Origin: Macrostomum lignano
Lineage: Eukaryota
Assembly: GCA_002269645.1 (NCBI GenBank)
Contig: NIVC01000512.1
Span: 79,967 to 143,966, forward strand
Direction of reading: 5' to 3'
DNA: 64,000 nucleotides
Below, in pieces: positions 1-62,200 of this stretch. Position numbers and translations under genes: made by a program. Under the pieces are notes generated by a model. That model saw nothing but the letters and a program-made list of their open reading frames with translations, had not been told where the DNA came from and searched no databases. How positions within the stretch are numbered: the first letter of the stretch is position 1; every line of letters starts with the position of its first letter.

Positions 1-554
1 GCAGTGTATATATGGTTTGGGATAGTTCCATCAGTTAGTTTAAGTTCTAGGAGTCCTTTGAGAGCTTCTATTGGAAGGCAGCTGGAAATTTGACCCTAGC
101 ATTATGCTATCCCAACAAGCAACCCCTGGCATTTGTCTGGTTAACAATGCAAACATCTCAACAAAGGGAGTAAAAAAAAATAAAATAGTAAACTCAGTGA
201 GAATGGAATGTAAATTCAGGTGGGCTGATTATGATAGATATAGCCCCCAACTGTACAGAATGGAGTTATGTTGGTGAGTATGGTACATGTACATACATCA
301 GATTGATATATGTATAATATGGCCAGCAAGTATTTATTGGCATGGAGAAAATGGTAGGTTCATTTACAATACTGGCATTGGCACGGAGAGCAAACATATG
401 CCCACGAATTAATGTACATCCAGTTAAGCAAATATATATGGCACGCAGTCAAAGATATGCACATGACCGGGGTTGGACAGCTATAGAGAAGCCAAGGAGC
501 TGCAATGTAAAGGGACAAAGCAAAGACAGTCATATGTATTGTATGTCACAGTTA

Positions 555-3500
555 CTAATAATCTTCATTGTCGTCATCGGACAGTATGCGCAGGTCTCTG
601 GCAAGGTAGTCAGTGTATAGATCGTACAGGAATTGCTGGCCTGTGTACTCGTTGAACTCGACCAGAAATTTCTAGTCCAGGACATCCCAGCTCAGTCCTG
701 GTGTGGGCAGCTGCCGAATAACATAGCCAGCGTCCCACTCCTCACCGTCCAGGTAGGCAAAACGCATCTCGATGCGCTGACCAGCAAAGAGGTGTGGCAG
801 GCCTCCTTGATAAGGCACCTCTGCCTCATTGTCCTCATCTTCCTCTGCGGCAGTGTGGTTTGCAGAAGCACCACGACCACGGCTGCGACCACCGCCTCGC
901 CCTTGGCCACGACCAGAGCCTCGCCCTCGGCCTCATCCACACTCTGCTGCACCAGTGCCTGCGCCTGTGCCAGGGACAGGGGCCCGGCATTTGGGCTTCT
1001 CCAGGACTGCCTGGACAGTGCTGCGGACACACTCACTGCGGATCGTCAGGTCCAGCATAGCGGAGGCAGCCGAGCCCAGAGGTGACGCAGCTGTGTTGTC
1101 CTGAGGGACAATCAACTCCAGGAGCTCACGTAGATGCTCGCGGAGCTGGGCAGTGGAGAAGCAAATGCCACCAGCAGGAAAACTCAGTAGGTTGGCCTCG
1201 TCCTTGGGCAGGCTGACCTCTGGAAAGAAATACAAAGCAGTAGAAAACCATACATGTAAATAGTTATGAGCATGTAGTTAGAAATACAGTTGCTTTCTTT
1301 GTACACCCTCATTCATATAAAAATTAGCAGTCGAAGTGTTGTGATATGTACTCGTAGCCTTGTGAAGCCGAAGCTGGGCCTTGACTGCTTGTTCATGCTG
1401 CGCAGGGTCCAGCACTGACAACTAGACCGCCATCTAGTCCGCGCTGCGCCACAGGCTGCCGCAGAAATCAATGCTGGAAATTGTAGCCCGCAGCACAGAG
1501 GCGCGAGTCTCTTCCTTGCGGGACTTCTGCAACCTGGCCCGTAGGAGCTCCTGGCGCCCCTGACGGATGAGCTGCGCGCTGCTTTGCCACTGGGTCTCAA
1601 GGGCTGGAGCAAGGGCACAGGCACGCGAAATCAGCAGGTCCTTCTTAGCCACCAACTTAGACTGAATCCATTTGCCTGTGCAGTTCTGGCCGAACAGTAC
1701 AGCCAACTCGCGAGCCAGGGGCCTCATGTAGGGCTTCAGCACCATCGTGCGGTCCAGAACGGCAAACACACGCTCACCAGCGACGTTGTCCTTTGGCGCG
1801 CGCTGCAGCCACTGCTGCCAAGTCCTTAGGCGACAGGTTGCGCAGGCTGCTGTCTGGCAAGTGATCGCACATTTTGCGCTCAAGCAGCATGACCATATGG
1901 GCAGAGAGCACCTGCAGCATTTGGCCAACAATTTCGGTCTCCTTAGCCGGCGCGTCCTCTGACATTAGTGACTCCCACATGAGTAGGGCATCTGGATCCT
2001 GCAGGATGACTTCCGTCAGCTCCGGGAACGGGCCCTTCAGCTCCGTCGAGAGAGCCAGAGTCGCCGCCAAGCTGACACTGCGCAACCAGCTGCATATGGT
2101 CTCGTAATGCTCATTCATGTCGAGCAGCGAAACATGCGAGTCGCGGAGCAGGAGCCACATTGGACGGATGAGCACCAGGTCGAGCAGCCCAAGGGCACGG
2201 CAGCCAGCCAGCAGGACCACAGACCGCAGGTCCGTTTGAACCACAATCAGGAGCCGATTGGGGCAGCAGTACTTGGAAAAGAACCCCAACAGGCGGCCCC
2301 TCTGCCGGTAGACGTACCCCCCGTTCGGGAAGATGACGTACTGTCTGTTGCCTCTAAAATCCTCCATCCAGAAGGGTGGAGCATCTTTCGAGGCCAGGTA
2401 GGAGTCGAGGGGCATGGCAACGCCACACTGCTTGCTCCCCATCCGATGAAAGGCCTTACAGGCCATGCAAATTAAGCGCTGTGCCGGACTCCAACTTGGA
2501 CGGGTGGAAGGCGGCAATCGCAGCGGCACCTTGGGGCTCAGACGAGATGCACTTCTCAGCATCGTGCATGCCCTTGTCTGTGACGCTGGCCAAGTTCACA
2601 AGGACATGCATGCTGCAAATAAGCAACATGACGGCTGAGGCACCGGCAGACCCTTCTGAGCCGCCAGCTGCATGCGCATGTCGTTGAAAAGCACCTAGAG
2701 GCACTTATTCACAATGTGCCGGTCTGTCATCAGGAACTTGACCCGCAACATCAGGCTCTCCTTCATCTTGCGCCATTCTTTGTTGCTATTGTCCAGGGTC
2801 AGCGCACAAAATGTGTCGACCAACTTGTCGACAGTGGTGTCAAGCTCACGGAAGTACATCTCTGCGGTGCCGCTTTCAATCTCACGCAGCGACAGGCCGA
2901 CATGGCGGTGGTCACCCAGGCCCGTGTCAATCTGATACTCGGCAAAATGCTGACCCTTCTTGGATGTGCTGTCTAGCATCACCAACAGCGGCTTGCCCTC
3001 CTGTGAGGCTGCAAGGATTCTCTCCAGGCCACTCGCCTTTGCCAAGCAGTTTCCAACGCTGAAGGTGGAGCTGGCAACTAGCGACTTCGACGGCAGCGGC
3101 AATGCCTGCAACAAGTCGAATGTCGTCAGCCCTGCTAGGACATGCCGGATGCAGCTCATGTCCTAGAACATGGCAGTCCAGAATGAGATGGACACAGGTC
3201 TCAATAACCCAATTTGTGAACTGGACGCCACCAATTGCACGCGGCTCTCGTCGCAACCAGAGTGCCCTTGGCAGCCTCCTGCAATGACTCCGTCACCTGG
3301 TCCAGGCTGCAGTATGCTTGCTGAAGCTGGCCACGCAGCTTGCTGACGGTCTTCTTCGCTTTGTCTGCAGTCTGGCCCTGCCGAGCAAGCTGCTTTGCCC
3401 GGTGGCGAAGGGTCTCTATGGCCTCATTCTGCTAGACGAAAATTCGCTGCTGCCGCCAGATGGTCGCCTTGCAGCTGGCCAGCTTGCCTTTTGCTCAGTG

Positions 3501-4124
3501 AAGCAGCCAAAGCTGAGCCTGAGCCTGAGCCAGAGTGGTCAATTGCTTCAGCGACTTGGCCTGAAGTGTCGACAATGCTTGCTGCTGCTGAGCCAGCTGA
3601 ACACGCAGGTCGGCAATGATGGCGCTGTGGCCCGCTGCTAACCCAGCGCACTCTTCAGCCGACATGGCACTGCAGTTGGCCATGGCCCTAAAGCTCTTGT
3701 CATTGCTGATAGAATCTGTCTCAGAGATGATGTGGCCCTGCTCATGATGCTGCTGCAGCTCCTTCAAAACCTGGGCAGGCAGTTGGAACTCTGCCCCCAG
3801 GAATTCTTAGAGGGCAGATGTGCTACCTCCCTGCACCTTGGTGCTGTGCCTGCGGGTCAGCTTGCGCACATTTGTCTTGGAATAAGCAACCTTCTGCAGC
3901 AGCACTTTCTTGGCATGGTCACTCAAGGCTGTCAATGGCAGGCCCATTGCACGAAGCAGGCATGTGCTGCTAGCAATGCCAGTCTCGCCCTTGGCCTTCG
4001 CCTTGACAACAAACTTCAGCGCCCTTTTGATGCTGATTGGCCTGAGGCAGTCCACTGGTGAACACCACTGACGCTTGGCCTGCAGCGCAGATGGCCCTGG
4101 TGTGGAGGCTGCACTTGATGCCAT
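555..4124 (-). pseudogene. Degenerate DDE-type DNA transposase (hAT/P/MULE-like fold, superfamily undetermined) with C-terminal Spindlin (Spin/Ssty) Tudor-like domain
   Basis: Minus-strand ORF pieces join across stops and frameshifts: coiled N-terminus, then MLDSTSKKG (D1), LMTDRH (D2), CSMH (CxxH), FRGNR, PKDNVAGERVFAVLDR (E), a GT-AG intron at 1220-1351 (LHKAT|KVSLPK), an RGG linker, and FAGQRIEMRF..EEW..FLVEF..FLYDLYTDYLARDLRIL. In-frame stops at 672-674, 933-935, 1434 and 2695. Confidence 0.75.
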
Positions 4125-4223
4125 ATTTCAGGCTGGCTGAAGACTTGGAATAGGAGTGAAAATTGGAAAGTATGAGCCCTTTATTGCTGCTCTGGCTAAG
4201 CAGCCCTAGCCCTAGCCTAGGCA

Positions 4224-4493
4224 TTTTGCATTTAAGAAGCCAATTACATGCTTAAAAGGTGCTTACTTCCTGAGTTATAGACCTTAAAAGTAAAAAATCC
4301 AGCATCCGCATAAGGAAGGGGCCAAAAATAGAGCAAAAATAGTAGTAAAAAGTGAAGAATTTTTTTTACTGTCCAATGTACCATTGTGCAAATGTAGTAT
4401 TTAAAGGCCCTAAATGTTTTGCATTTAAAAAGCCAATTAGATGCTCAATAGGTTGCTTACTTCCTGAGTTATAGCCAATGGAAGTAAAAAATC
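4224..4493. repeat. Imperfect ~76-bp direct repeat pair (4224-4299, 4417-4493) upstream of the transposase
   Basis: Both copies read ttttgcattta..agccaatta.atgct.aa.agg.tgcttacttcctgagttatag..aagtaaaaaatc; probably subterminal repeats of the transposon. Confidence 0.65.
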
Positions 4494-4503
4494 ATACACC
4501 CAA

Positions 4504-5196
4504 CAACAAACAACAGAGTATGCTGCCAGTTCACAAAAGCAGCATCAGATGGCACACTTCAAAGCTTGGGCGCGAACAAAGGCCGCACTGCCGGCAGAGT
4601 CCAGGGCGCCGGCGTTAGCCAGCAGACAGTCGACGTAGCGCCGAGTCCTTGCCTGTCCCCGCCGGTAGGGTGCCTGCAACGTAAGTAGCAGCACCTCCTG
4701 CACCGGCTCCGGACAGTAGGCCTCGGCGCAGATGACGTGGCCTGCCAGCTGGAGTCGCCAACGGCGCAGCAGATCGCTAGGACAGGCCAGGCCGGCGCAA
4801 TGATAGAGCGCCGTGTTGGTGACTCGCTCGTTGCCAATCTTGAAGGCGGCGCGCAGCAGGCCAGCGTGTGCCGCGTCGACTTGAGCCTTGAGCGAGTCTG
4901 TCAGTGTCCAGGTCTCGGCGTTGTATAACAGGATGGTCTTGATCACCGCCTGGAACAGCGCCACCCTCTGGCAGTCCGGTAGGGCTTCGGACTGCAGGAC
5001 TGACCTTATAGAACGAAAGGCAGCCCAGGCAAGTCCTCGGCAACGCCGCAGATCCTCGCAGACGTCGGGAACCAGACCGCCGAGGTAGACAAACTGCTGA
5101 CATCTTGGAAGCTTGGAATCTTGGAAGCGTGCCAGACAACACCGAGGCTGCAATCTTCTGCCGAGGCGCTGATGGACAGGCAAGTGAGCTTCCAAG
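4504..5196 (-). mobile_element. 5'-truncated RTE-clade non-LTR retrotransposon with 5' inversion
   Basis: PRCQQFVYLGG..LLYNAETWTLT..LRRWRLQLAGHV..RYVD (RTE thumb/C-terminus). 10-bp TSD ATACACCCAA at 4494-4503 and 5197-5206. 3' stem-loop atgctgc..gcagcat and short TTG tail. Segment ~5128-5196 is inverted. Confidence 0.9.
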
Positions 5197-5770
5197 ATAC
5201 ACCCAAAAAGTAAAAAAAGTGCATGTTTTTTGAGACAATGATGTGATAATTCTAAACATCAATAAAATGTATAAAATAGCTATGCTAGATAACCAATTTA
5301 TCTTTCTAATGACACCAAGAACAGCAGCATAGGTTTTGTAGCAAAAAAGATATAGTCGTTTAAAGCAAAAAAATTACATTTTTATACAAAAATGGTCCTG
5401 CCCATAATGTATTTTTCCATAAGAAAAAGTTTAAATTTTTGTCACTAAATATGTCATAACTTTTTTATTCCTCAACCAATTAAAAAAATGAAGACATTTT
5501 GGAATACTGTTACTGCCATTTATAATATGCATGCATCAGATAACCTAAATTCTAAAGTTTCAAAATCTCACTGGACACTATCAATTGCTCAATATCTTAG
5601 AATTTTGAGGAACTGAGTCTTATCAAACCAAGTGACTTTTTGCAGTAACTGGCAATGTTAAGGCATATTATGGAGGTAGACACAGTTGCATTGTTTGCAC
5701 TAAGAATATCATCAAAGCTATTAAAATGTGTATGTTTAGGCACAACGTAGGAATTTACCTGGCAATTTTT

Positions 5771-7707: not shown

Positions 7708-9964
7708 TTAGTGAAATTCAAATGGCTTCAGCATCGCCAGCTTCAGCACTGGCATCTTCGGCGTCAGCAGCTTCAGTGCCGGCGGCTTTGGTGTCAGCAG
7801 CTTCAGCATCAGCAGATTCAGCATCGTCGGCTTCAGGGTTGGCAGCAGCTTTGGCTGATGACTGCTGATAACAGCCGTCTGCTTGGTTTGCTTCTTTTTG
7901 CCAAAAGGCGGCGGTCCCGTCTTCCGCATGTGTAATTCCCGAAGTCGCCAGAAAGCTGTTGACACGAGCACCTTGCTGTTGGCCAGCCTCGCTTCAGTCT
8001 GCAAGTAGCTGGCAACAGCAGAGCATTTGGCAGCTGATAGTCTGGGAGCGTTGCTGCGACCAGTGTAGGTACAATTGCGCAGCTCCTTTATGCAGACAGC
8101 CATCAGCAGCTTCTGGATGAGGTGCAACTGGCTGCTGTTGTAGGGCTCCTGCTGGAAATCGGCCAATGTGGCGCTCAAAATGGCTGCCACTATTAAGTCG
8201 ATCTGTGAAGAGGAAGACAAGGGGGGACTTGTCCAGTTGTTTAATACCGGTACATACTGTGCAATATTGCTCCCCAACTTTCATCTCCTCCTCCACATCA
8301 ATCACATGCAACGACTTGCCATTACATTGCAGCCTGTAAAAAGAGGTTCTGTGCAGTCGGAGTGTTGCTGCTGTATGGGCACAGGCATAGGCGCAGAGTT
8401 GGCCAATGTAGAGCTGCAGGGCATTGACGGCTCCAGTTGAAAGATGTCGTACAGCTTCTCAATGGACACCACATTGGCAGCAGGAGCAGGCAAGCTGCTT
8501 GGGTTGCCGATGCCGCCACTGGAGGCTGAGGAGTAGGGGAATGTTGAATAATGCAAAGGAATGGTTGCGTAAAGTAGAATTACTTACGTTGCAGCAATTC
8601 TGGCTGCAGTAGCCGAGCCTGCGGCTACCTAGGATGCCAACGAGTGCAGCAATGCAGCCACTGACTGCGCCTCAGCAGCGGCAGCATGATGCCCCTGCTG
8701 TAGCTGCGCAACTGTGCTATGGAGGCTGCTTATTTCTTGAGCCATCTCGGCCTGCAGAGCCAGCGCATTATTGCGCTCCCAGCGCAAGGCATCAAGCTTA
8801 GTCTGCTAACAGTGTCTCACAGGCCAGAGACAGCACGTTGGCTTCAGCCAACTGAATGTCACAAAGCTGGCACTGTGGACATTGCTGCTGCACTGCAAGG
8901 GGATCAGGTGGAAGATGCTTGCAGAGCCACTTGTGAAGCTTGCCTTCCGGTAGCTCTTAAAGGGCCCGTTGAACAGCAGGGCCCTGTGCTTGGCACTGGC
9001 ATTTGTTATTGCCTTCACATAGTAGACGGACACATCTACCCAACAAGTATAGCTGCCAGCAGGTATCGGTGTCGCAATGTAGGATTCGCATATGAGCTTG
9101 AAATTTAGTTGGGGTACAAACTGCACCAGCCAGTATTGCATACCTGCTTGCGCAACAAGTGGAGCATTTGCACCCACAAATAGTGCCACAGAGGCTGTCG
9201 CAACCGCCAACTTGGCAATTGTTGACACCTGCAAGTGTGACGCTGCGGTATTACGCGTGCGCTTGGCAACTGAGCCATCCGCACTGGTCTCGCCATGCTT
9301 CGTTCCGGCTTGGAACTAAGTGGGGAGGGGGTGAGTGAATGAGAAGTCATTGAGAAGAACTGTTGCTGTAGGGATTGTGTACTCATGTTGTAGCATTTCT
9401 GGCTGCGGAGTCGCTTCTACTGCCATCTGCGAGGTTGCCACTGCCACCTGCAGGGTTGTCGCTGCTAACGCTAGGAGTGGGAGGGTGAGTAAATATTGAA
9501 CGATGCAAAGAAATGATTGTTTAAAGTAGAATTACTTATGTTGCGGCAATACCGGCTGCAAAGTCGCCGCCGCTGCCACCTGCGGCACCTGCAGGATTGC
9601 CACTGCCACCTGCAGCACCTGCAGGGTTGCCGCTGCCTGTGGCAACTGCAGGGTTGCCGCTGCCACCTGCGTTACCTGCGGGGTTGCCGTTGCCACCACT
9701 GGGAGCGAAAGGGTGGGTGAATGTTAAATGATGCAAAGGAATGGTTGTTTTAAGTAGGATTACTTACATTGCAGCAATTCCTGCTATGGGCAAGTTGGGT
9801 CTCCTGGCAACCACCCGCGGCTTGTGGGTTTGCCAAGCCGGGTTTTTGTGCACCATGGCGCTCCACATCTTGCATATAAGCTTGCCGCATTCCTGGCATT
9901 CTACGTGCTGAGGCTTCTGCCTGCACAAGGTGCACTTCTTAACATTTTGGCGAGTCCAGACCAT
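7708..9964 (-). pseudogene. Transposon accessory gene: B-box-like zinc finger, low-complexity exons, YWLVQF domain, BEN-like domain
   Basis: MVWTRQNVKKCTLCRQKPQHVECQECGKLICKMWSAMVHKNPAWQTH (B-box1 spacing, sixth Cys changed to Trp). MQYWLVQF. IQKLLMAVCIKELRNCTYTGRSNAPRLSAAKCSAVASYL resembles a BEN domain. Four related short introns, two with GT>AT; frameshifts present. Confidence 0.55.
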
Positions 9965-10679
9965 GATGATTGAATATACTGAAATAGATAGTTGGATAGA
10001 CTGAAGTAGATAGTCAGATAGACTGGAGTAGATAGTCAGATAGACTGGAGTAGATAGTTGGATAGACTGAAGTAGATAGTGCCAATATGTGCAGTAGTTT
10101 AAAATTAGCAATTCACCTGCTTAAATGGATGCATCGATTTCTATAGCCAGTGACCACAGAGTGTATCCACTGCCTAGTGCAATAAGTCAAGCAAAGCATC
10201 CCCAATTTCATGGCAGCAAGTGTAAAATACATTGCTAACATAGCAGAAAGTTATAATGCAACATATAGTACGCTACGTTTGCTGGCAACAACACTGAACA
10301 GTGTATACACAGTGTGTGTACTGGGGAGTGCATAAATAAAGATGTACAAGCATTATTGATTGCCTTATTTGATGTTGCTTATTTGGAGGGGATAACGGCT
10401 CATCTTGAAGAATCATTTTCTAAGGGGCACATGCTTGTGTGTTACATTTGCCCTCTTTTAACATGCTTCCTTTAGAATCTTTTTAAGTCTGAAAAACCTA
10501 CAACAAATGGATGCTTCTCTGGTGATGTCTCTCGCAAAGCCCAAAATTGGAAATGCTATCTGCAATTTACTTAAAAATGTATTCCACAATTTTAATAACT
10601 GCTTCAACTTTTCACTTCCAAGTATTCAACTCCAACTCTAACTTTAACTAGCTGTCAGCAATTGTCCCTCTTTGGGATT

Positions 10680-13190: not shown

Positions 13191-16100
13191 CAGGGAAGCC
13201 TCTTTGTTTGCTTTGCTCACCAGGAAGCGACACTGAAATCGTGCCTATACAAGTTGAGTCTCGTTTTTCTTTCCTAGACTACACAAGAACCCACTTATTT
13301 CAGTGCGCTCAGTATGAGAAAGTGTATAAATTGATACCTGTTTGTTTAGAAAATAAAAGGCTGCAATTAAAAATTATACAACAAATAAATGAAACTGAAA
13401 AAATTAAAAATTGTCATTAAATATTATATACAAAAAGGAAAAATCTGAGCTTCCCTCATTAAAACGCATATTAAACAGCTAACTCGAACTCTTGCTAGAA
13501 AGCTTGGACGCCTTACAATTCATCACTTTCTGGTTCTTCGCCTTCTCATTGTTTGTCTCATTGACAAAATTCTTTAGATAAATCCGGACTGCAGGAATCA
13601 AGATCCGCGAAGAAAGAGTAGCAGCTGCCTTTCCACAACTGCAAGTCTGGCTTGAAAGGGTCATAAAATCAGTGGATTCACTCACATAGTCCTGGCAGAG
13701 CTCAACAATATTTTGAACTAAATTACCAGAGGTGAGAAGATCAGCAGTTAACAGACCATTATCTCGCAGATGTCCAAACATGAAGTAGGATGCCTTCAAA
13801 AGAAAAAATACGAATTTGCTAGGGCACTTCAGACTGCCTTGGTCACGCATTTGAATCAGGGCAAAGTCATCAGCACAATCCTCTTTGGCAAAAAACTCCA
13901 AGTAATCATTAGTAAGTAGAAGATTCTTGCAGTCAGTGCACTTCAGCTAGCCGCATAGAGCTTTAGACACGTAGCCACCAAGATAGGAACAAATGTTTCG
14001 GTCACTAGATGTAAGAGCAGCATCAAGATGCTGGAGACCTAGAAGTTTCACGGATAAGAGTGGATTAAAAAAACTCTGATGAACTTGCCTGGTCAAGATT
14101 TTTTAAATCTTTTAGTCCAAGGCCATGACACTGAAGCAGGCTAGAAATGCAAATTTTCTTCTCAGCTTAAAGGATCTGCTAGACAGAAACAAAATAGTTG
14201 CCTCCATGAAACTGGCAGTAGCAACCAAAGCGCCGCTCAATCCAGTCACTGACTATCCTACCTGTCAAAACAGAGGGAAATATATACCTACAGAAAAGGT
14301 GCTCGGAAAGATCAGCAAGAGTGAGATAGCAGGACTTAACAGCAAGGAAAGTGGGAGCAGTCAAGCTGGGCAACTTCGAATCCTCCCCACGTTGGAAGAA
14401 AGCGGCAAACTGGCGCAGCTTGTTGAGGCGGTGATCGTTTGGCACCAGTGGAGCGGCGTTGGAAAGCCGCTTTTCCTTCGCTTTCCTAGTGGTCTTGACA
14501 TTCCAGATTGTCCACATGTTAAGAATGAGCACTAGGAAAGCTAACAAACCAGAGGAAAAACTATAGAACTTTGCTGCTTCTACAGTAGACTCACTGAAGA
14601 TGCTGGCTGCATGCTGAACATTAGTCTTCTCCAGGTTTGTTGGATTCAAGGACCTTGTATTCAGTTGAAAGGCAATCCGAGCTGGTTGCCCAAGTTCTTG
14701 CTCATGAAGTTTGTGCAAATTGCAGAAATCTGCTGTTTGGATTTTCTGGGGATCGTGAAGTCCGGAAACTGAAACACCTGGTGCGAAATCCAATTGTTCA
14801 AGATGTTCTTAAAGTTGTGTACAGGGTCAAAGAGAAAGAACAGTGGCTCACCAGACACTGGATTTGGAATTGATGATTGAGCTTGCCTTTGCATAGAAGA
14901 CCCTGAAAGAGGCTCCTATTCACTGCATTGTTGTCAACAATGCACACCACTGGCTTCAGGTGAACCCTATCAAGCAGAGCAAGACTGTCAGTGAGGTGAT
15001 TTTGCAAGTCCAGAGCACTAAGCCTACTTTTTGGAATAAGAGAAATTACTACCTAGAAGTCTCCATGCAGCGACTTGATCAAAAAAGTGCACACAGTTTT
15101 GGCGAGCTCATTGGTTTCTGCGTCAATGCCAAATACCTTGCCTCCACTGAATTCCATTTGCTTCAACAAATAAATTTTGTCAATTGCAAGAAACACTACC
15201 CTCTCAGACTCAGGCAGGCTGTCAACTTTTAGCTTGAGATAATATTCGGTAGCCTTGATATCAGGGTCATTGCTCAATCTGGAAGAAAGCCTCTGCAGAT
15301 GCCTAACACTTGGGAGGTTGACTGTGTTGGATTTCTGAATGAAATTGTACGCTGATGGGCTGTGGTGCTGCAACAGGTATGAAAAAGCTAGTAGCTTGCT
15401 AGAGTATGTTAGCTTCCCTTCTTCAAACTCAAAAAGCTTAGCTGCTCAACAAGAAAATTCAGTTTAGCAAAGCAGCCTCCTCAATGCATGTATCTAGCTC
15501 TTGATCACTCTTGACTTCTATCTTAGCTAGTAAGAGGTGCTCCTCATAACCATGCCAGCAATCTTCCAAACGGACATTTTTTAGCCTAGCTAGGATGTTT
15601 TCAAGTTGGGCAAAGTTTTAAGACTGCTGTCAGCTGCCAGATCTCCAGCAAAAGAGGCTTGCTTATCACCACCAACTGTGACCTCAAACAGCAGCTCTTG
15701 GCCAACATTCAGCGATGTGGCAATCTCCAAGTTGTTGGCACCGGACATTCTAGTTGTAAAAAAGGTTACACTCAATTTAGAGATCACCTTGAAAAAGCAC
15801 CTTAGATGATCTGGTAGATCATATGACACAATAGCGTGGAAGTCAGAAATCACATCCTTTTGTAGAAGCTCCTCTGCTTCTACCTTGCAATGCTGAATGT
15901 CGTTCTCTCAATGGCTCTCAGCCAATGTACAAACCATTTGCCTCTCTTCCGGGATGGGATGGCCTTGCTCAAGTAGGATGCAATATATAGGAAGATGCAC
16001 GGCACAGCATCATTTGTCAGATGCCAGTTTTTCAGCTTAGCAGTAGTAGTCAATGGATTGTCAGATGCTGGCCTTTTGCGATTTAGGTTGGAATCCATAG

Positions 16101-18863: not shown

Positions 18864-21320
<2,457 letters not shown>

Positions 21321-33990: not shown

Positions 33991-34916
33991 TACTTCTGCA
34001 GACAAGAAATGTTTTGTTCAATAAATTTGATTGACACAGCAAGCAGGGATAGCCAAGATTCCTCCAGTTCTATCACCTTCGCAACGAATTTTCTATCCTC
34101 TAATAATTTTCAGCTTTTTTTATGAAGACAGCTCGCCTGCTTATTGGAACGAAAGAAGAGCAGAGAGCTGCATAGGGAGGAAAAAGTTATGAGCAGGCGG
34201 CTGTGCAGCTTCTCCGAGTGCTGCCAGACTGCCAGCATGCCAACGGGAGATGCTCCTCCTCCTCCTGAAGTGCCGGGGGGCGGGCAGGCGAGAGTGGTGG
34301 GTGGGGAGCTGCTGGGCGTCAGACGGACAGGTGATGGAGACGCCACACCCAGAGCGGAGAATTTTTTCCACTGTCTTCTTCTACTAAAAGCGAACAAAAA
34401 TAGGAAAACTATAGGAGCTGGCCAGAAATTCTTCCAGTGACGGTGGAGGGGGGAGTTAAGGGAGGGTAGGAGTTGCAGGGCAAATGGGAGGCCTAGAGCA
34501 GGTATAGTGAGTTTGCTTACCAGATAGTGGCGCAGCAGGTGCCGGTGGGAATTAAATGAGGCGTGAAATCCCATCTGGGGTCCGGCGGGTTTGAGTAGAA
34601 AAAAGGCAACTGCAGCACAGTTTCTGTTAAATGCATCCTGAAAGCAGAGCCTCTGTAGGTAGAATGCAGAAACATCCGACTCATCCTTGGATCTCCTTGA
34701 GTCTGGGCGGTTCGATTTCGCGATAGATTTTTAATATCGTTGATAAAATTTTAAACGCAGACAGGATTTCCTTCCCCGCGAAATTGAGGATTACCGCAGC
34801 TGCTCCGGCCGGCTGCTAAGTGGCCCGGGCGGCTCTCGTTTCCGCTTTGAATAACAAGCAGAGAATTGGTAAAGAATTGCTCTAGAATTAGAATGAGCCA
34901 GCTCCGATGAATCCCT

Positions 34917-35842
34917 ACAAGCGCGCAAAGTCAGTCACAAGCGCGCAAAGTCAGTCACAAGCGCGCAAAGTCAGTCACAAGCGCGCAAAGTCAGTCACAA
35001 GCGCGCAAAGTCAGTCACAAGCGCGCAAAGTCAGTCACAAGCGCGCAAAGTCAGTCACAAGCGCGCAAAGTCAGTCACAAGCGCGCAAAGTCAGTCACAA
35101 GCGCAAAAAGTCAGTCACAAGCGCGCAAAGTCAGTCACAAGCGCGCAAAGTCAGTCACAAGCGCGCAAAGTCAGTCACAAGCGCGCAAAGTCAGTCACAA
35201 GCGCAAAAAGTCAGTCACAAGCGCGAAAAGTCAGTCACAAGCGCGCAAAGTCAGTCACAAGCGCAAAAAGTCAGTCACAAGCGCGCAAAGTCAGTCACAA
35301 GCGCGCAAAGTCAGTCACAAGCGCGCAAAGTCAGTCACAAGCGCGCAAAGTCAGTCACAAGCGCAAAAAGTCAGTCACAAGCGCGAAAAGTCAGTCACAA
35401 GCGCGCAAAGTCAGTCACAAGCGCAAAAAGTCAGTCACAAGCGCGCAAAGTCAGTCACAAGCGCACAAAGTCAGTCACAAGCGCGCAAAGTCAGTCACAA
35501 GCGCGCAAGGTCAGTCACAAGCGCAAAAAGTCAGTCACAAGCGCGCAAAGTCAGTCACAAGCGCGCAAAGTCAGTCACAAGCGCGCAAAGTCACTCACAA
35601 GCGCGCAAAGTCAGTCACAAGCGCAAAAAGTCAGTCACAAGCGCGCAAAGTCAGTCACAAGCGCGCAAAGTCAGTCACAAGCGCGCAAAGTCACTCACAA
35701 GCGCGCAAAGTCAGTCACAAGCGCAAAAAGTCAGTCACAAGCGCGCAAGGTCAGTCACAAGCGCAAAAAGTCAGTCACAAGCGCGCAAAGTCAGTCACAA
35801 GCGCGCAAAGTCAGTCACAAGCGCGCAAAGTCAGTCACAAGC
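34917..35842. repeat. 20-bp minisatellite (~46 copies)
   Basis: Unit CAAGCGCGCAAAGTCAGTCA. Confidence 0.97.
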
Positions 35843-36919
35843 ATGATTGAAGCTTCCTCCCGGTTTTCATTGTTTTTTCAAGCATTTTTAGTATCAAAAT
35901 GGTTGGCCAGGTGATAGAGGCTGGTCGAAAGACACTGCACAAAGATGTTGCTGAGCATAAGTGTAAAACTGGACTCATTGGTAAAAAAATTAACTTAAAA
36001 ATTTAATTGTGGATGGTGAGAAATCCAATCATACTCTGAAGACTCCCAAGTTACATTTAATAATAAAACTTACTCAGCTGAGCAGCTAAGTCAGATGCAA
36101 CTCAAGCCAAAATAAGCAATCGGAAAAATCGATTTTTTCACTCCGCGTGCAGACTCCGGTTACCCAGCAGCTCACAAATTTATGATGATGAAGACAAGCC
36201 GGGCCGGAGCGCGAAACCGTGTCCCGGCCTGGCGGGCGCTTCCGAAATGTGTAAAAAAGGAATTATTTATTCTTCGGCTCATGAGGCCATGAGGCTCTGA
36301 GGACCCGACAAAAAACTGGGCATCATCCATTTGGAGCCTTCTCAGCCTCATTCCGTTGGGGATTTTCGCACCTCAGCTCAGCCGGCACAGATTTAACGCG
36401 GCCTGACAGGTTAATATCGGAATGAGACGCCCAGTGCTGCATCGCTGTAGGAATTCTCTTCGCACAGCTGACAGGCGCAGCTTTAATATTTCTTGTCTTA
36501 TGGGAAGTCCGGGCTTGATGAGCTGCGGGCTTGATGGGCAGGACAGCAGCGGGCGATAAAGATCCCCTCCACGGAAGAAGGAAGCTGTTTTTCTCCAGGC
36601 CGAAGCTGACGTCAGTGGGCGGACATGGCGCCACGGATTTCTTGGCAGTGCGCGGCGGAGCAGAGAGTGCTTCGGCTAGCAAAATCTGCATTGATCAGCT
36701 ATTCAAAGTCAATCGCTTCTCAAAGCAGGATTGTCCCAAATTTAGCCTTTACTATAAATATGCACCTTTGCATTAACGCTCAATGTCAGGCTGGGTTTTT
36801 GTCAATGAAATAATCAAATATAAATTGCAACTGCATGGCGCAGTATAAAATTAACTGTGTACAGCTTGATGTACAGTGCTGGTACTGTGGGGGGGGACGC
36901 GACTCACCTCTGTACTTCT

Positions 36920-39984: not shown

Positions 39985-42900
39985 ATCAGTAGTCAGCAGT
40001 ACTGAGCCAAGGTAGACGAACTGCTGACATTGCGGAATTCCCGCGCAGCCAGTCGCGGGGGAAAAACGCTGAGCACTGCGGTCTTTTGCGTGCTGACCAC
40101 CAGGCCGACACTCGCCGCAACAGCAACCAGCTTGTCCAGTTGTTGTTTAGTACCAAGCCCGGAAGGAACACCACGAGAAACAGAGGAACGCAGAGTTTGG
40201 CGAGAACACAGAGGCGAAGCAACGGCCTCCAAAGCCAAGACGAGGAGAAAACAAAAAAGGGGGAGAAAAAAGGAAAAAGAAAACCAAAAACGTTAGCAGG
40301 AGACGCAGAAGAACGCAGATAACATGCCGCTAAAAACAGGGCACCGACCCCCCGAGCAAAGGAAACAGACGCCGCCGCCGACTGACGGAACTGCGGCAGG
40401 TACCGCTGCTCCTCGCTGCTCCTCCAGTCCTCGATGCGCATGACATCCGACACGGGCAGACCCAGCGACGACGCCCAGGCCGCACCCCCTCGCCGCAGGC
40501 TGTGAGCGGAGAAAAACTCGCACTTGAAAACGGCCGCGGCCAGCTTGCTGCTGAGAAAGCGGTCCAGCTGCGGGCCCGTCAGCAAACGTCGGTTGCCCCG
40601 GGCATCGCAAAACGACCAGAGGGGCTGATCAGCCGACACCAACCGACTCTTACGGATGTGTCGCTCGAGGGCGGCGACAGGGCACAGTGCCAACCACCAA
40701 GCCAGTCTTGGGAGAAGGACCAGATGCACCCGCTCCTTAAACTGGATGGTCTTCCCGACATCGCAGCGCAGGACTAGACCCCTGGGGTGCCTCTGCAGGT
40801 TGGAGCGCTGCATAAGTGCTGGGCCCTTAGCTGTGCGGGGGAGCAGGCTGGACTTGCGGAGCATACCCCACCAGCAGCAGATGACTGCCGCCCAGCAAGC
40901 CAGCTGAGACCGGCAAGCCCCGTAGGCTTGGTGCTGCAGCTCCACCAGCATGAAGGAGGATACCGGCCGCTTCTTGGTAGCTCGCAGCCCCAACTCGCGC
41001 TTGGCGCCACGTAGAAGCTGTGCCGTGGCAGCATGCTTGGTCAGGTGTGGCGCAGAGTTGACTTGGAACCAGAGCGACAGGGAGCTGGCCACAGAGGAAA
41101 CACCACTGAAGGAGCGCATCCGGGTGCCCACAAGGTCAGCCAGATAGTTGAGCAATGCTACCACAGGACAGTGGACCGAGTCCCAACCAGATCGCAGGAC
41201 GTGTCTGTAGATGGGTCTCCTTGATGGTGGCGCATACGAGGCGCTCAACAGCGAGGCGGCGCGGTGGCTGAGAGGGAAACTGGGACCCAGCTTGGCGGCC
41301 TGTAAATGAAGGGAGGCGGCGGTGGCGGGGCAGAAAGTATGCATGTGCAGGGTCGCCAGCATCCACTGGCACACAGAACCATGACAACGGAGTAGTTGAA
41401 CAACTTTAACAACTGGCTAGGCTCATGCAGCCGAGAAGCCGCATCCGCAAAAATCTGGAACTCGCCTGGCACGTGGAAAGCACGAACACTCATCCCATAG
41501 CGCCGGCGCATGAGTGCCGCCGTCTGCAGCAGCCGCTGAAGTGGCGCACACTTGGAAACGCCCTTGTTGATAATGTGGCAGGCGGCTTGGTTGTCGCAAT
41601 ATATGTTGATCCTGGAGCCCTTGAGCTGCTCCCTCCAGCGAATGACGCCCAGCAGCGGTGCCACAGCTTCCTTCTGGTTGATGGGTAGCTCTACAAAAGC
41701 CGAGTCCGCATCCATCAACCAGTTTACATAGCACATAGCGTCGCACCGCCTCTTCCGCAAGCATCCGACTCGATGGCAACATCATTCACGTACCCGGGTC
41801 ACAACTTCGACCACCAACACGACTTCAACGAGACTGTCCACCAATGAAAAAGGCTCCGCAGCCGCTCATCGATTTTCATCCGCTGCCCTGGCCGAAGAGC
41901 ATTGCAACACTCGATCAACTCCCGCATGAACGTGCGCCCAGAACAGATAACCTGCGCCGCCCAACCGAGCTGCAATGACTGCCGACTAATTCTGGTTTTT
42001 CCCGTTTCCAGACAAGCTTCTCCTCCTTCTCATCCGACAGTTTCTACACCCCGGTGAGAGTCAAACTCGACACCCAAGAAGGACATACGCTGAGAGGGCC
42101 GCTGACGCTTGCCCCAGTTGACAGTAAAGCCCAAGCGAGTCACGAGGTCAGTCATCTGATCGAGAAATTTCTGACAGTCCTCACGCGAACCACAAAAGGC
42201 AAAGTCATCCAAGTACGCCTCAGTCCTGATGAAACCTCTCTGCACCATCATCAGCTTCATCACCTCGCTGAGCCTGTGAAAGCAGATCACCGAAGCCGCC
42301 GCTCCAAAGGGTAGCCTGGTGTCGTACATGTAGGACTCAGCGTTCGAGTCCCGAAAGCAAAACTTGATTCCAGTCCGGCTGAAGTCATCAGGGTGCACAC
42401 CAACCGCACGATAAGCTTCACTCAGGTCGACTTTGGTCATCCAGCATCCTCTAGTCAACTTCCTGGCAAGAAAAGCGCAGCTTCTCCTGACCGACCCACA
42501 TCCAATTGGCACAGCCACTGGCCGGCCGGCTACAGTCGTGAATCAGGTGCACCCGTTCGTTGTCTTTCGGCAGGGCACCGATGGCGCTCACAATCACAGG
42601 CCGCTGCCCCTTCGGGCACAGGCGGTGCAGCTCAACCTCTTTGTCGATCTGCTTCTCCACCAGTGTCATTCAGTCATTGACTAAGGCTAGCGACAGCGGG
42701 AACGCAGGAGCTCACTGCGAAACCGGGCATAAAAAACCCTCAGCAGGCGGAGGGGGAGGGCCGCTGCACACAGGAGGGCAGAAACCAACACAACGTACAA
42801 CCCCCACGCCAACCCCGCGCATGCACAAAGTTGCAAACCCAGCCCCCCCCCGGGGGTACTAAAGCTGGTCTGCTCATCGGCACTCCTCAGAACAAACGAA

Positions 42901-44765: not shown

Positions 44766-62200
<17,435 letters not shown>

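What the first reader, a model, noticed from the sequence alone, without database searches (positions are those of the whole stretch)
555..4124. DDE transposase fused to a Spindlin-type Tudor histone-reader domain
Seen: reading through two stops in the frame of ORF 933..1235, the transposase ends in FAGQRIEMRFAYLDGEEWDAGYVIRQLP..KFLVEFNEYTGQQFLYDLYTDYLARDLRILSD (570-791). The ORF track misses this. Established: Spindlin1 Spin/Ssty repeat 2 (recalled as IGKAVEHMF..DEWRGMV..FYITY..LYMYQLLDDYKEGDLRIM) binds H3K4me3 through an aromatic cage F141/W151/Y170/Y177. By eye the four cage positions align to F, W, F, F here, and the DYxxxDLRI tail is conserved. Inference: a cut-and-paste transposon family whose transposase reads methylated histones to choose or avoid integration sites, analogous to chromoviral integrases. 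It might also bear on the origin of Spindlins. I cannot assign the D-D-CxxH-E core to a named superfamily.
Basis: partly seen in the sequence, partly recalled or inferred. Interest (0 to 1): 0.85.

Follow-up and report, generated by a model that had tools for sequence, protein, structure and literature searches.

The report
Transposon enzyme carrying a Spindlin-like reader
A dead copy of a flatworm "jumping gene" encodes a cut-and-paste enzyme whose tail is a single Spindlin-type histone-mark-reading domain; intact and recently mobile relatives carry the same tail, so the element may use chromatin marks to steer its insertions or to evade silencing.

Summary
On the minus strand, window 573-800 encodes the quoted peptide, interrupted by stops at 933-935 and 672-674. 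The whole gene (555-4124) is a pseudogene with 8 in-frame stops and at least 5 frame changes.

It belongs to a DNA transposon family found in Macrostomum lignano and in metagenome contigs. In M. lignano a 7.29-kb unit occurs at three loci at 99.9% identity or close to it. Two full copies have 16-nt inverted ends (TAGRCTGTCCAGTGAG) and different 7-bp target duplications. The window keeps the 5' end at 5567-5580; its 3' end runs off the window.

The C-terminal domain is a real, divergent Spin/Ssty (Spindlin) Tudor-like domain:
- A 10-sequence profile hits only Spindlins in the PDB (E = 4.6e-5).
- HHalign against SPIN1 repeat 2 gives 93.9% probability.
- The top 39 Foldseek hits to an AlphaFold model are all Spindlins.
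- The four cage positions are F, W, F, F.

An intact 1195-aa ORF (L004) has the core and the domain in one frame. Pfam's own Spin-Ssty model does not detect the domain.

The catalytic core matches no Pfam or PDB profile, so its superfamily is unassigned. Histone reading and insertion targeting remain inference. This is a new variant of a known kind, reader capture by a transposable element.

The parts
5567..5580 (-). 5' terminal inverted repeat of the element (TAGTGTCCAGTGAG)
   Evidence: Aligns to the 16-nt TIR TAGGCTGTCCAGTGAG of the M. lignano elements, and similarity continues inward. Over the first 260 nt, 181 positions are identical to L001 against 160 +/- 3.7 for shuffles.
4125..5566 (-). 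5' non-coding part of the element, with a probable nested LINE-like fragment (4494-5225) and a 76-nt direct repeat (4224-4299 / 4417-4493)
   Evidence: It lies between the TIR and the ATG, as in L001, where the TIR is 1.4 kb upstream of the gene. The ORF 4545-5195 has no Pfam hit.
3249..4124 (-). N-terminal region and long coiled coil of the transposase pseudogene (3 in-frame stops)
   Evidence: tblastn to P0001 residues 1-287. Only coiled-coil-type weak Pfam and PDB hits.
1822..3232 (-). Putative catalytic core: D (2971-2973, MLDSTSKKG), D (2722-2724, LMTDRHIVN), CxxH (2606-2617, CSMH), FRGNR (2344-2358). It is split over three frames and has one in-frame stop.
   Evidence: About 55% identical to P0001 over 449 aa. 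Motifs are invariant in the family alignments A4 and A9. No Pfam or PDB match.
1352..1802 (-). Segment with the conserved PKDNVAGERVF motif (E at 1773-1775; resembles the hAT C-terminal SERxFS motif) and a helical region; 2 in-frame stops
   Evidence: The N-x3-E-[RS]-x-F motif is kept in P0001, P0002, P0005, P0009, L004 and L003.
1220..1351 (-). GT-AG intron (132 nt)
   Evidence: Splicing joins ...LHKAT|K|VSLPKD..., matching P0001 LHKCTKMVLPKDK.
870..932 (-). RG-rich linker (GRGRGSGRGQGRGGGRSRGRG), preceded by the in-frame stop at 933-935
   Evidence: Equivalent RG-rich stretches occur in L001, L008, P0009 and P0021.
573..800 (-). Single Spin/Ssty (Spindlin)-type Tudor-like domain with cage F/W/F/F; in-frame stop at 672-674
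   Evidence: Profile against the PDB: Spindlin-1 at E = 4.6e-5, and 17 of 18 hits are Spindlins. HHalign 93.9%. AlphaFold pLDDT 81, and the top 39 Foldseek hits are Spindlins.
1..557 (-). 3' non-coding part of the element, cut by the window edge (no 3' TIR present)
   Evidence: In L001 the 3' TIR lies 1.5 kb after the stop codon. No TIR match in window 1-555.

Best explanation
Window 1-5580 (minus strand) is a decayed, 3'-cut copy of an autonomous cut-and-paste DNA transposon. The family is found in the flatworm Macrostomum lignano and in unidentified eukaryotes in metagenomes. The element has short inverted ends (TAGnnTGTCCAGTGAG), makes 7-bp target duplications, and encodes one protein of about 1,100-1,200 aa. 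That protein has an N-terminal region, a long coiled coil, a putative RNase-H-type D-D-CxxH-E catalytic core with a helical insertion, a low-complexity linker (RG-rich in the Macrostomum lineages), and one C-terminal Spin/Ssty (Spindlin)-type Tudor-like barrel with a conserved aromatic cage. Shown here: the domain is homologous to Spindlin repeat 2, it is kept in frame across lineages whose cores are only about 26% identical, and the element has moved recently. Inferred: the cage binds a methylated lysine (H3K4me3-like) or methylated arginine on nucleosomes. The oligomeric transposase would thereby be tethered to marked chromatin, biasing where the element inserts, as chromodomains do for chromoviral integrases. 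The window copy itself is dead.
For: Family and mobility:
- Homologues in M. lignano are 51% identical or less.
- A 7.29-kb unit is shared by L001 and L002 at 99.89%, with unrelated flanks.
- That unit has 16-nt TIRs and 7-bp TSDs, CCTATAA and GTATAAT.
- A third copy, 5'-truncated, is 99.86% identical.
- A second subfamily has the same TIR core (L008).
- The window's 5' end is homologous to these ends.

Domain:
- An 8-sequence profile puts Spindlins on top of the PDB.
- The L004 domain alone gives Spindlin-4 at E = 0.0099, and the top 16 hits are Spindlins.
- The 10-sequence profile gives E = 4.6e-5, and 17 of 18 hits are Spindlins.
- HHalign gives 93.9% probability, P = 1.5e-7, and a score of 47.9 against a maximum of 20.6 in 200 shuffles.
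- The AlphaFold2 model has pLDDT 81. The top 39 Foldseek hits are Spindlins, with rmsd down to 1.7-2.8 A over about 70 columns; SGF29 comes next.
- The cage W is present in all 10 family members. Position 1 is F/Y/W wherever that position is present (9 of 10 sequences) and position 3 is F/Y in all 10.

Fusion in frame:
- L004 has an intact 1195-aa ORF.
- The last exon of L008 is continuous through linker and domain.
- P0009 carries it in one ORF.

Precedent: TE capture of Chromo and PHD readers, including hAT plus Chromo in a sponge (10.1101/2021.11.30.470311), and a Tudor domain on an Ectocarpus Gypsy element (PMC12477816).
Against: - No binding or targeting data exist.
- Pfam's Spin-Ssty model detects none of the sequences.
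- Spindlins use three packed repeats, and here there is one.
- Cage position 4 varies (F, V, H, Y; L in the truncated P0021 sequence).
- The catalytic core has no Pfam or PDB profile match. Its AlphaFold model is poor (pLDDT 61) and its Foldseek hits are meaningless.
- In the three youngest M. lignano copies the domain ORF is intact but lies in a different frame from the upstream exon in the assembly. These copies may have moved without it, unless this is an assembly indel.
- A distant relative (L003, the P0006 locus) has no such domain.
Confidence: 0.6

Rival explanations
1. The Spindlin-like domain is real but serves regulation or counter-defence rather than target choice. It could compete with host readers that mark young transposons for silencing. 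It could also bind methyl-arginine on the element's own RG-rich linker or on host factors such as PIWI-type RG motifs.
For: An RG-rich stretch sits directly upstream of the domain in the window, L001, L008, P0009 and P0021. In mouse cells SPIN1-SPINDOC silences young transposable elements (PMC11512509; 10.64898/2026.08.20.746118). The young L001-type copies apparently moved with the domain out of frame, so the domain may not be needed for integration itself.
Against: L004 keeps the domain but has no RG-rich linker. No host Spindlin pathway is known in flatworms. All documented TE reader fusions with known function act in targeting.
Confidence: 0.2
2. The resemblance to Spindlin is that of a generic SH3-like or Tudor barrel. 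The tail is a structural or oligomerisation module with no methyl-mark reading.
For: Pfam Spin-Ssty does not hit. Foldseek E-values are only 7e-3 and weaker. Small beta-barrels recur by convergence.
Against: In a PDB-wide sequence search only Spindlins reach E < 0.01. The alignment covers the whole repeat, including the repeat-2-specific DYxxGDLRI tail. All four cage positions are aromatic in the window and the W is invariant. The shuffle control is far below the true score.
Confidence: 0.08
3. The large protein is not the transposase. It would be a passenger or host-derived gene carried by the element, or a domesticated host gene, and mobility would be supplied in trans.
For: The core has no match to any known transposase profile or structure.
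Against: It is the only gene called within the 7.29-kb TIR-bounded unit. The ordered motifs D...D...CxxH...N-x3-E-R-x-F are invariant across lineages 26% identical. Copies are multiple and decay as pseudogenes (the window, L003), which is not how a host gene behaves.
Confidence: 0.07

Closest known systems
Spindlin family (SPIN1-4, Ssty), Spin/Ssty Tudor-like repeat 2
   Same: Sequence and predicted fold match repeat 2 (SPIN1 132-195). Aromatic residues sit at the four cage positions F141, W151, Y170 and Y177, and the DDYKEGDLRIM-like tail is present.
   Different: There is one repeat instead of three. It is fused to the C-terminus of a transposon protein. It is too divergent for Pfam PF02513 to detect. 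It has a 6-8-residue insertion between strands 2 and 3. Ligand unknown.
Chromoviruses (Ty3/Gypsy integrase with a C-terminal chromodomain) and other TE reader captures (Chromo or PHD on retrotransposons and DNA transposons; hAT plus Chromo in Ephydatia; Tudor on Ectocarpus Gypsy-10)
   Same: A methyl-mark reader of the royal family sits at the C-terminus of the integration enzyme of a mobile element.
   Different: The carrier is a class II cut-and-paste element of an unassigned superfamily in a flatworm. Targeting has not been demonstrated.
hAT superfamily transposases (Ac, hobo, Hermes), and the wider C/DxxH group (Mutator, P, Kolobok). Recalled from memory: Yuan and Wessler 2011.
   Same: Same order of motifs: D (DxTS), D (TDxxxN), CxxH, a long helical insertion, then an E in an SERxFS-like motif. 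Short TIRs begin with TAG. The gene contains introns.
   Different: No Pfam hAT, DUF659 or Dimer_Tnp_hAT hit and no Hermes hit. The TSD is 7 bp, not 8. No BED finger was seen. The N-terminal coiled coil is more reminiscent of P-element transposase (from memory).

Membership tests
Spin/Ssty (Spindlin) Tudor-like domain | Significant profile similarity to Spindlin repeats | tested here: met
   hmmsearch of the 10-sequence profile against the PDB gives Spindlin-1 at E = 4.6e-5, and 17 of 18 hits are Spindlins. HHalign gives 93.9%.
Spin/Ssty (Spindlin) Tudor-like domain | Pfam PF02513 Spin-Ssty hit above the gathering score | tested here: not met
   No Spin-Ssty hit at E up to 10 for any single family sequence.
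Spin/Ssty (Spindlin) Tudor-like domain | Tudor-like beta-barrel fold closest to Spindlin structures | tested here: met
   AlphaFold2 pLDDT 81 and pTM 0.67. The top 39 Foldseek PDB hits are Spindlin-1, -2B, -3 and -4, with TM about 0.6 normalised to the query.
Spin/Ssty (Spindlin) Tudor-like domain | Four-residue aromatic cage (SPIN1 F141, W151, Y170, Y177) | tested here: met
   The window has F, W, F, F. W is invariant in 10 of 10 members, position 3 is F/Y in 10 of 10, and position 4 varies.
Spin/Ssty (Spindlin) Tudor-like domain | Three tandem repeats packed together | tested here: not met
   Only one repeat was found in six-frame HMM scans of the window and of L001, L002, L003 and L004-L007.
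Spin/Ssty (Spindlin) Tudor-like domain | Binding of H3K4me3 or another methylated peptide | not testable with these tools
   Needs peptide arrays or ITC.
Class II TIR (cut-and-paste) DNA transposon | Terminal inverted repeats flanked by target-site duplications, with copies at unrelated loci | tested here: met
   L001 and L002 share 7.29 kb at 99.89%, with 16-nt TIRs and TSDs CCTATAA and GTATAAT. A third copy is in L009. The window has the 5' TIR only.
Class II TIR (cut-and-paste) DNA transposon | RNase-H-fold DDE/D transposase | tested here: inconclusive
   The ordered invariant motifs D, D, CxxH and E are present. There is no profile hit, and the AlphaFold model of the core is of low confidence.
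hAT superfamily | 8-bp target-site duplication | tested here: not met
   The TSD is 7 bp in both young full-length copies. With only two examples this is weak.
hAT superfamily | Pfam hAT-type domains (Dimer_Tnp_hAT, DUF659, DUF4371) or similarity to Hermes | tested here: not met
   No such hit. A UniRef cluster name, 'DUF659 domain-containing', is the only hint.
TE-encoded chromatin-reader fusion (chromovirus-like targeting) | Reader domain in the same ORF as the integration enzyme in intact copies | tested here: met
   L004 has a 1195-aa intact ORF. The L008 last exon is continuous. P0009 also carries it.
TE-encoded chromatin-reader fusion (chromovirus-like targeting) | Insertion bias toward the mark that is read | not tested
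   Needs a genome-wide insertion map and ChIP or CUT&Tag data for M. lignano.

The most novel reading that the evidence does not exclude
This is a previously undescribed superfamily-level lineage of eukaryotic cut-and-paste transposons: 7-bp TSD, TAGnnTGTCCAGTGAG ends, and a core invisible to Pfam. It captured a single Spindlin repeat and uses H3K4me3-type reading to direct insertion next to active promoters. Both young insertions sit in TATAA-containing sites. It would be the first DNA transposase with a Tudor-royal-family reader other than Chromo, and a natural chromatin-guided integration module.
Probability: 0.25. Interest if true: 0.85.

Novelty: new variant of a known kind. Interest (0 to 1): 0.68.

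Why it matters
Reader domains captured by mobile elements show how parasites of the genome choose safe or favourable landing sites, and they are templates for chromatin-guided gene-delivery tools. Chromo and PHD captures are documented. A Tudor domain on a transposable element was reported as a first only in 2025, on an algal Gypsy retrotransposon (PMC12477816). A Spindlin-type reader on a DNA transposase appears in none of the papers I could search.

The family has near-identical, recently mobile copies in M. lignano, a laboratory flatworm with transgenesis, so the targeting hypothesis can be tested directly. Mammalian SPIN1-SPINDOC silences young transposons, so a transposon-borne Spindlin-like domain also raises the possibility of mimicry or competition. 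In addition, the catalytic core is an unclassified transposase family.

Tried and rejected
- Pfam scans of the window pieces, of all homologues and of short core segments gave no Spin-Ssty, hAT or other transposase hit.
- phmmer of the window domain alone against the PDB found nothing.
- A word-indexed homology search with the domain alignment found nothing.
- A metagenome scan with the domain alignment found no confirmed locus.
- The representative-library hits P0010, P0013 and P0014 are bacterial repeat proteins that accumulate weak partial matches. I rejected them as false positives.
- Core profiles against the PDB gave only coiled-coil noise.
- AlphaFold2 of the core reached pLDDT 61, with the putative RNase-H part below 50, and its Foldseek hits were meaningless.
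- There is no 3' TIR in window 1-555 and no second copy of the element in the window.
- No TIR pair was found in L004.
- The TSD of the older L008 copy is degenerate.
- Megablast of the window against the fetched M. lignano loci found nothing, so the source species of the window is not established.
- I considered a link between SPINDOC and hAT-derived genes from memory, but the papers I read did not support it, so I dropped it.
Full report
**1. What is in the window**

The minus strand of window 555-4124 carries a long, broken reading frame. In the frame of ORF 933..1235, reading through TGA at 933-935 and TAG at 672-674, the translation ends with ...GRGRGSGRGQGRGGGRSRGRG...GLPHLFAGQRIEMRFAYLDGEEWDAGYVIRQLPTPGLSWDVLD*KFLVEFNEYTGQQFLYDLYTDYLARDLRILSDDDNEDY**.

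The gene as a whole is dead. It has eight in-frame stops and at least five frame changes relative to its closest intact relatives. One GT-AG intron at 1220-1351 restores ...LHKAT-K-VSLPKD..., as in the homologue P0001. There is only one copy in the 64-kb window.

**2. It is a copy of a mobile DNA transposon**

The stitched translation finds a small family. It includes several Macrostomum lignano proteins (P0001 is 51% identical; also P0002, P0004 and P0005) and a distant ENA protein, P0006, at 27%.

The two M. lignano loci that encode P0001 share exactly one block, 7.29 kb at 99.89% identity, with unrelated flanks. That block ends in 16-nt inverted repeats (TAGGCTGTCCAGTGAG and TAGACTGTCCAGTGAG). 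It is flanked by 7-bp direct duplications that differ between the loci: CCTATAA and GTATAAT.

- A third copy, 5'-truncated and 99.86% identical, lies in L009.
- A second subfamily, L008 (6.56 kb), has the TIR TAGGGTGTCCAGTGAG.

This is the signature of a recently active cut-and-paste element, and the large protein is the only gene called inside it.

In the window, the same end (TAGTGTCCAGTGAG followed by ATTTTGAAACTTTA...) lies at 5567-5580 on the minus strand, 1.45 kb upstream of the ATG. The distance in L001 is 1.4 kb. The first 260 nt align to the L001 end with 181 identities, against 160 +/- 3.7 for shuffles. No 3' TIR is present: in L001 it lies 1.5 kb beyond the stop codon, and the window has only 557 nt there. 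The element is therefore cut by the window edge.

**3. The C-terminal domain is a Spindlin-type Tudor-like domain**

Single-sequence searches fail. There is no Pfam hit, and phmmer of the window domain against the PDB finds nothing.

Family members were collected from these sources:
- the out-of-frame but intact copy in L001 and L002;
- P0005;
- five representatives from an exhaustive HMMER search of 1.84 billion proteins: P0007 and P0011 from M. lignano, and P0008, P0009 and P0012 from metagenomes;
- P0021;
- the distant L004.

Three further hits from the exhaustive search are bacterial repeat proteins and were discarded.

The signal strengthens as the profile grows:
- With 8 sequences, 17 of 19 PDB hits are Spindlins (best E = 0.04). 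The alignment covers all of SPIN1 repeat 2.
- The L004 domain alone gives Spindlin-4 at E = 0.0099, and its top 16 hits are Spindlins.
- With 10 sequences, Spindlin-1 reaches E = 4.6e-5, 17 of 18 hits are Spindlins, and the next hit is at 0.089.
- HHalign against human SPIN1 gives 93.9% probability and P = 1.5e-7. The score of 47.9 compares with 11.7 +/- 2.3 (maximum 20.6) for 200 shuffled SPIN1 sequences and 10.9 for the reversed one.

An independent test by structure agrees. An AlphaFold2 model of the window's domain (7-sequence alignment, pLDDT 81, pTM 0.67) was searched with Foldseek against the PDB. The top 39 hits are all Spindlin-1, -2B, -3 or -4, with rmsd as low as 1.7-2.8 A over about 70 columns. 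SGF29's tandem Tudor comes next.

In the alignments, SPIN1 F141, W151, Y170 and Y177 face F, W, F and F of the window (codons 759-761, 735-737, 654-656 and 630-632). The tail DYLARDLRIL faces DDYKEGDLRIM. Across the ten family sequences:
- the cage W is invariant;
- position 1 is F, Y or W in the nine sequences that include it;
- position 3 is F or Y;
- position 4 is mostly aromatic, but V, H and L also occur.

Two qualifications apply. By Pfam's own threshold this is not a recognised Spin-Ssty member. And there is one repeat here, not three.

**4. The fusion is real and old**

The metagenome contig L004 (JAAUYA010307264.1) carries an uninterrupted 1195-aa ORF. Its core is only about 26% identical to P0001, yet it has the same layout and ends in the domain (...ILHKWETEEEGERWCKGKVL...FTVEYQDGTFDVPLYEDFQKGDLVIM).

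In L008 the last exon runs without a stop from the conserved PTLPRDLAALLNL segment, through an RG-rich linker, into an intact domain. P0009 (399 aa) joins the PKDN..GERIF motif, an RG linker and the domain in one ORF.

Two observations cut the other way:
- In the three youngest copies (L001, L002, L009) the domain ORF is intact but lies in another frame than the upstream exon. This is either an assembly indel or a very recent lesion.
- The distant P0006 locus (L003) has no such domain within 8 kb.

**5. The enzyme part**

The family conserves, in order:
- D (xTDGTSKKG);
- D (FLMTDRHVVN);
- CxxH (FCGMHxIVN);
- FRGNR, NRLL, GCRALG and a helical region;
- N-x3-E-[RS]-x-F (SERDFS in L004).

From memory, this order is that of the C/DxxH group of eukaryotic transposases (hAT, Mutator, P, Kolobok), and the last motif resembles the hAT C-terminal motif.

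Nothing confirms it. There is no Pfam or PDB profile hit with single sequences or with 5- and 7-sequence profiles. The AlphaFold model has pLDDT below 50 over the putative RNase-H part, so its Foldseek hits are meaningless. A 7-bp TSD does not fit canonical hAT, which makes 8 bp. The claim 'transposase' rests on mobility plus motifs.

**6. How it most likely works**

Shown here: the element is a TIR/TSD transposon that moved recently, and its large protein carries a conserved Spindlin-type barrel with an aromatic cage.

Inferred: the cage binds a methylated lysine or arginine on chromatin and tethers the oligomeric enzyme (the long coiled coil suggests oligomerisation), biasing integration. 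Precedents are chromoviral integrases and the Chromo and PHD captures catalogued by Grau-Bove et al., including hAT plus Chromo in a sponge.

The main rival is a regulatory or counter-silencing role. Support for it comes from three observations: the RG-rich linker next to a Tudor-like domain; the finding that mammalian SPIN1-SPINDOC silences young TEs; and the apparent mobility of copies with the domain out of frame.

Two weaker rivals are a generic barrel without reading function, and a passenger gene rather than the transposase.

**7. Novelty**

Reader capture by TEs is a known kind. A 2025 paper calls a Tudor domain on an Ectocarpus Gypsy element the first TE with a Tudor domain. My searches for Spindlin or Spin-Ssty together with transposase or transposable elements found nothing relevant.

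A Spin/Ssty reader on a DNA transposase therefore appears to be a new variant, carried by an unclassified transposase lineage. The window copy is only a fossil, but intact and young relatives make the idea testable.

Noticed in passing
window 870-932 (minus); also L001 about 9990-10060, L008 about 14060-14150: An RG/RGG-rich linker lies directly upstream of the Tudor-like domain in the window, L001, L008, P0009 and P0021, but not in L004. RG repeats are typical arginine-methylation substrates and Tudor ligands.
   Followed up: partly
L001/L002 about 9950-10010; L009 14050-14550: In the three near-identical young M. lignano copies the Spindlin-like ORF is intact but lies in a different frame from the upstream exon. 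The annotated protein P0001 therefore ends in an out-of-frame reading of the domain.
   Followed up: partly
L001 4586-4592 and 11883-11889; L002 equivalents: Both young insertions have 7-bp target duplications containing TATAA (CCTATAA, GTATAAT). This could reflect a TATA-like or simply AT-rich target preference; there are only two cases.
   Followed up: partly
window 4494-5225: An ORF (4545-5195, minus) that by eye resembles the region after the reverse transcriptase of LINEs. It is flanked by imperfect 29-nt direct repeats (4494-4522 and 5197-5225) and is probably a truncated LINE nested in the element's 5' region. No Pfam hit.
   Followed up: partly
window 4224-4299 and 4417-4493: Two copies of a 76-nt direct repeat (about 88% identical, 193 nt apart) lie just upstream of the transposase ATG.
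   Followed up: no
window 1822-3153 compared with L009 14708-17334: The window copy is continuous where the M. lignano P0001 gene has gaps or introns at about residues 303, 399 and 479. L004 is intronless. Intron content therefore differs between subfamilies.
   Followed up: partly
window 20538-21320 (+): An ORF with strong DZF_N and DZF_C domains (ILF2/ILF3/ZFR type), probably an exon of a host gene.
   Followed up: no
window 47168-49312 (-): A LINE-type ORF with reverse transcriptase and RNase H domains, ending in a long EKERG-repeat tail.
   Followed up: no
window 34907-35914 (+): An ORF made of about 16 tandem copies of a 20-aa (60-nt) unit, KRAKSVTSAQSQSQARKVSH: a minisatellite.
   Followed up: no
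window 39986-41374 (-): A 462-aa ORF with an SAHSLRRGGA motif that by eye recalls tyrosine recombinases of Crypton/DIRS-type elements. No Pfam hit.
   Followed up: no
L003 1771-3664: Next to the distant relative P0006 lie genes with MADF and DDE_Tnp_4 (PIF/Harbinger) domains, so that region is also transposon-rich.
   Followed up: no
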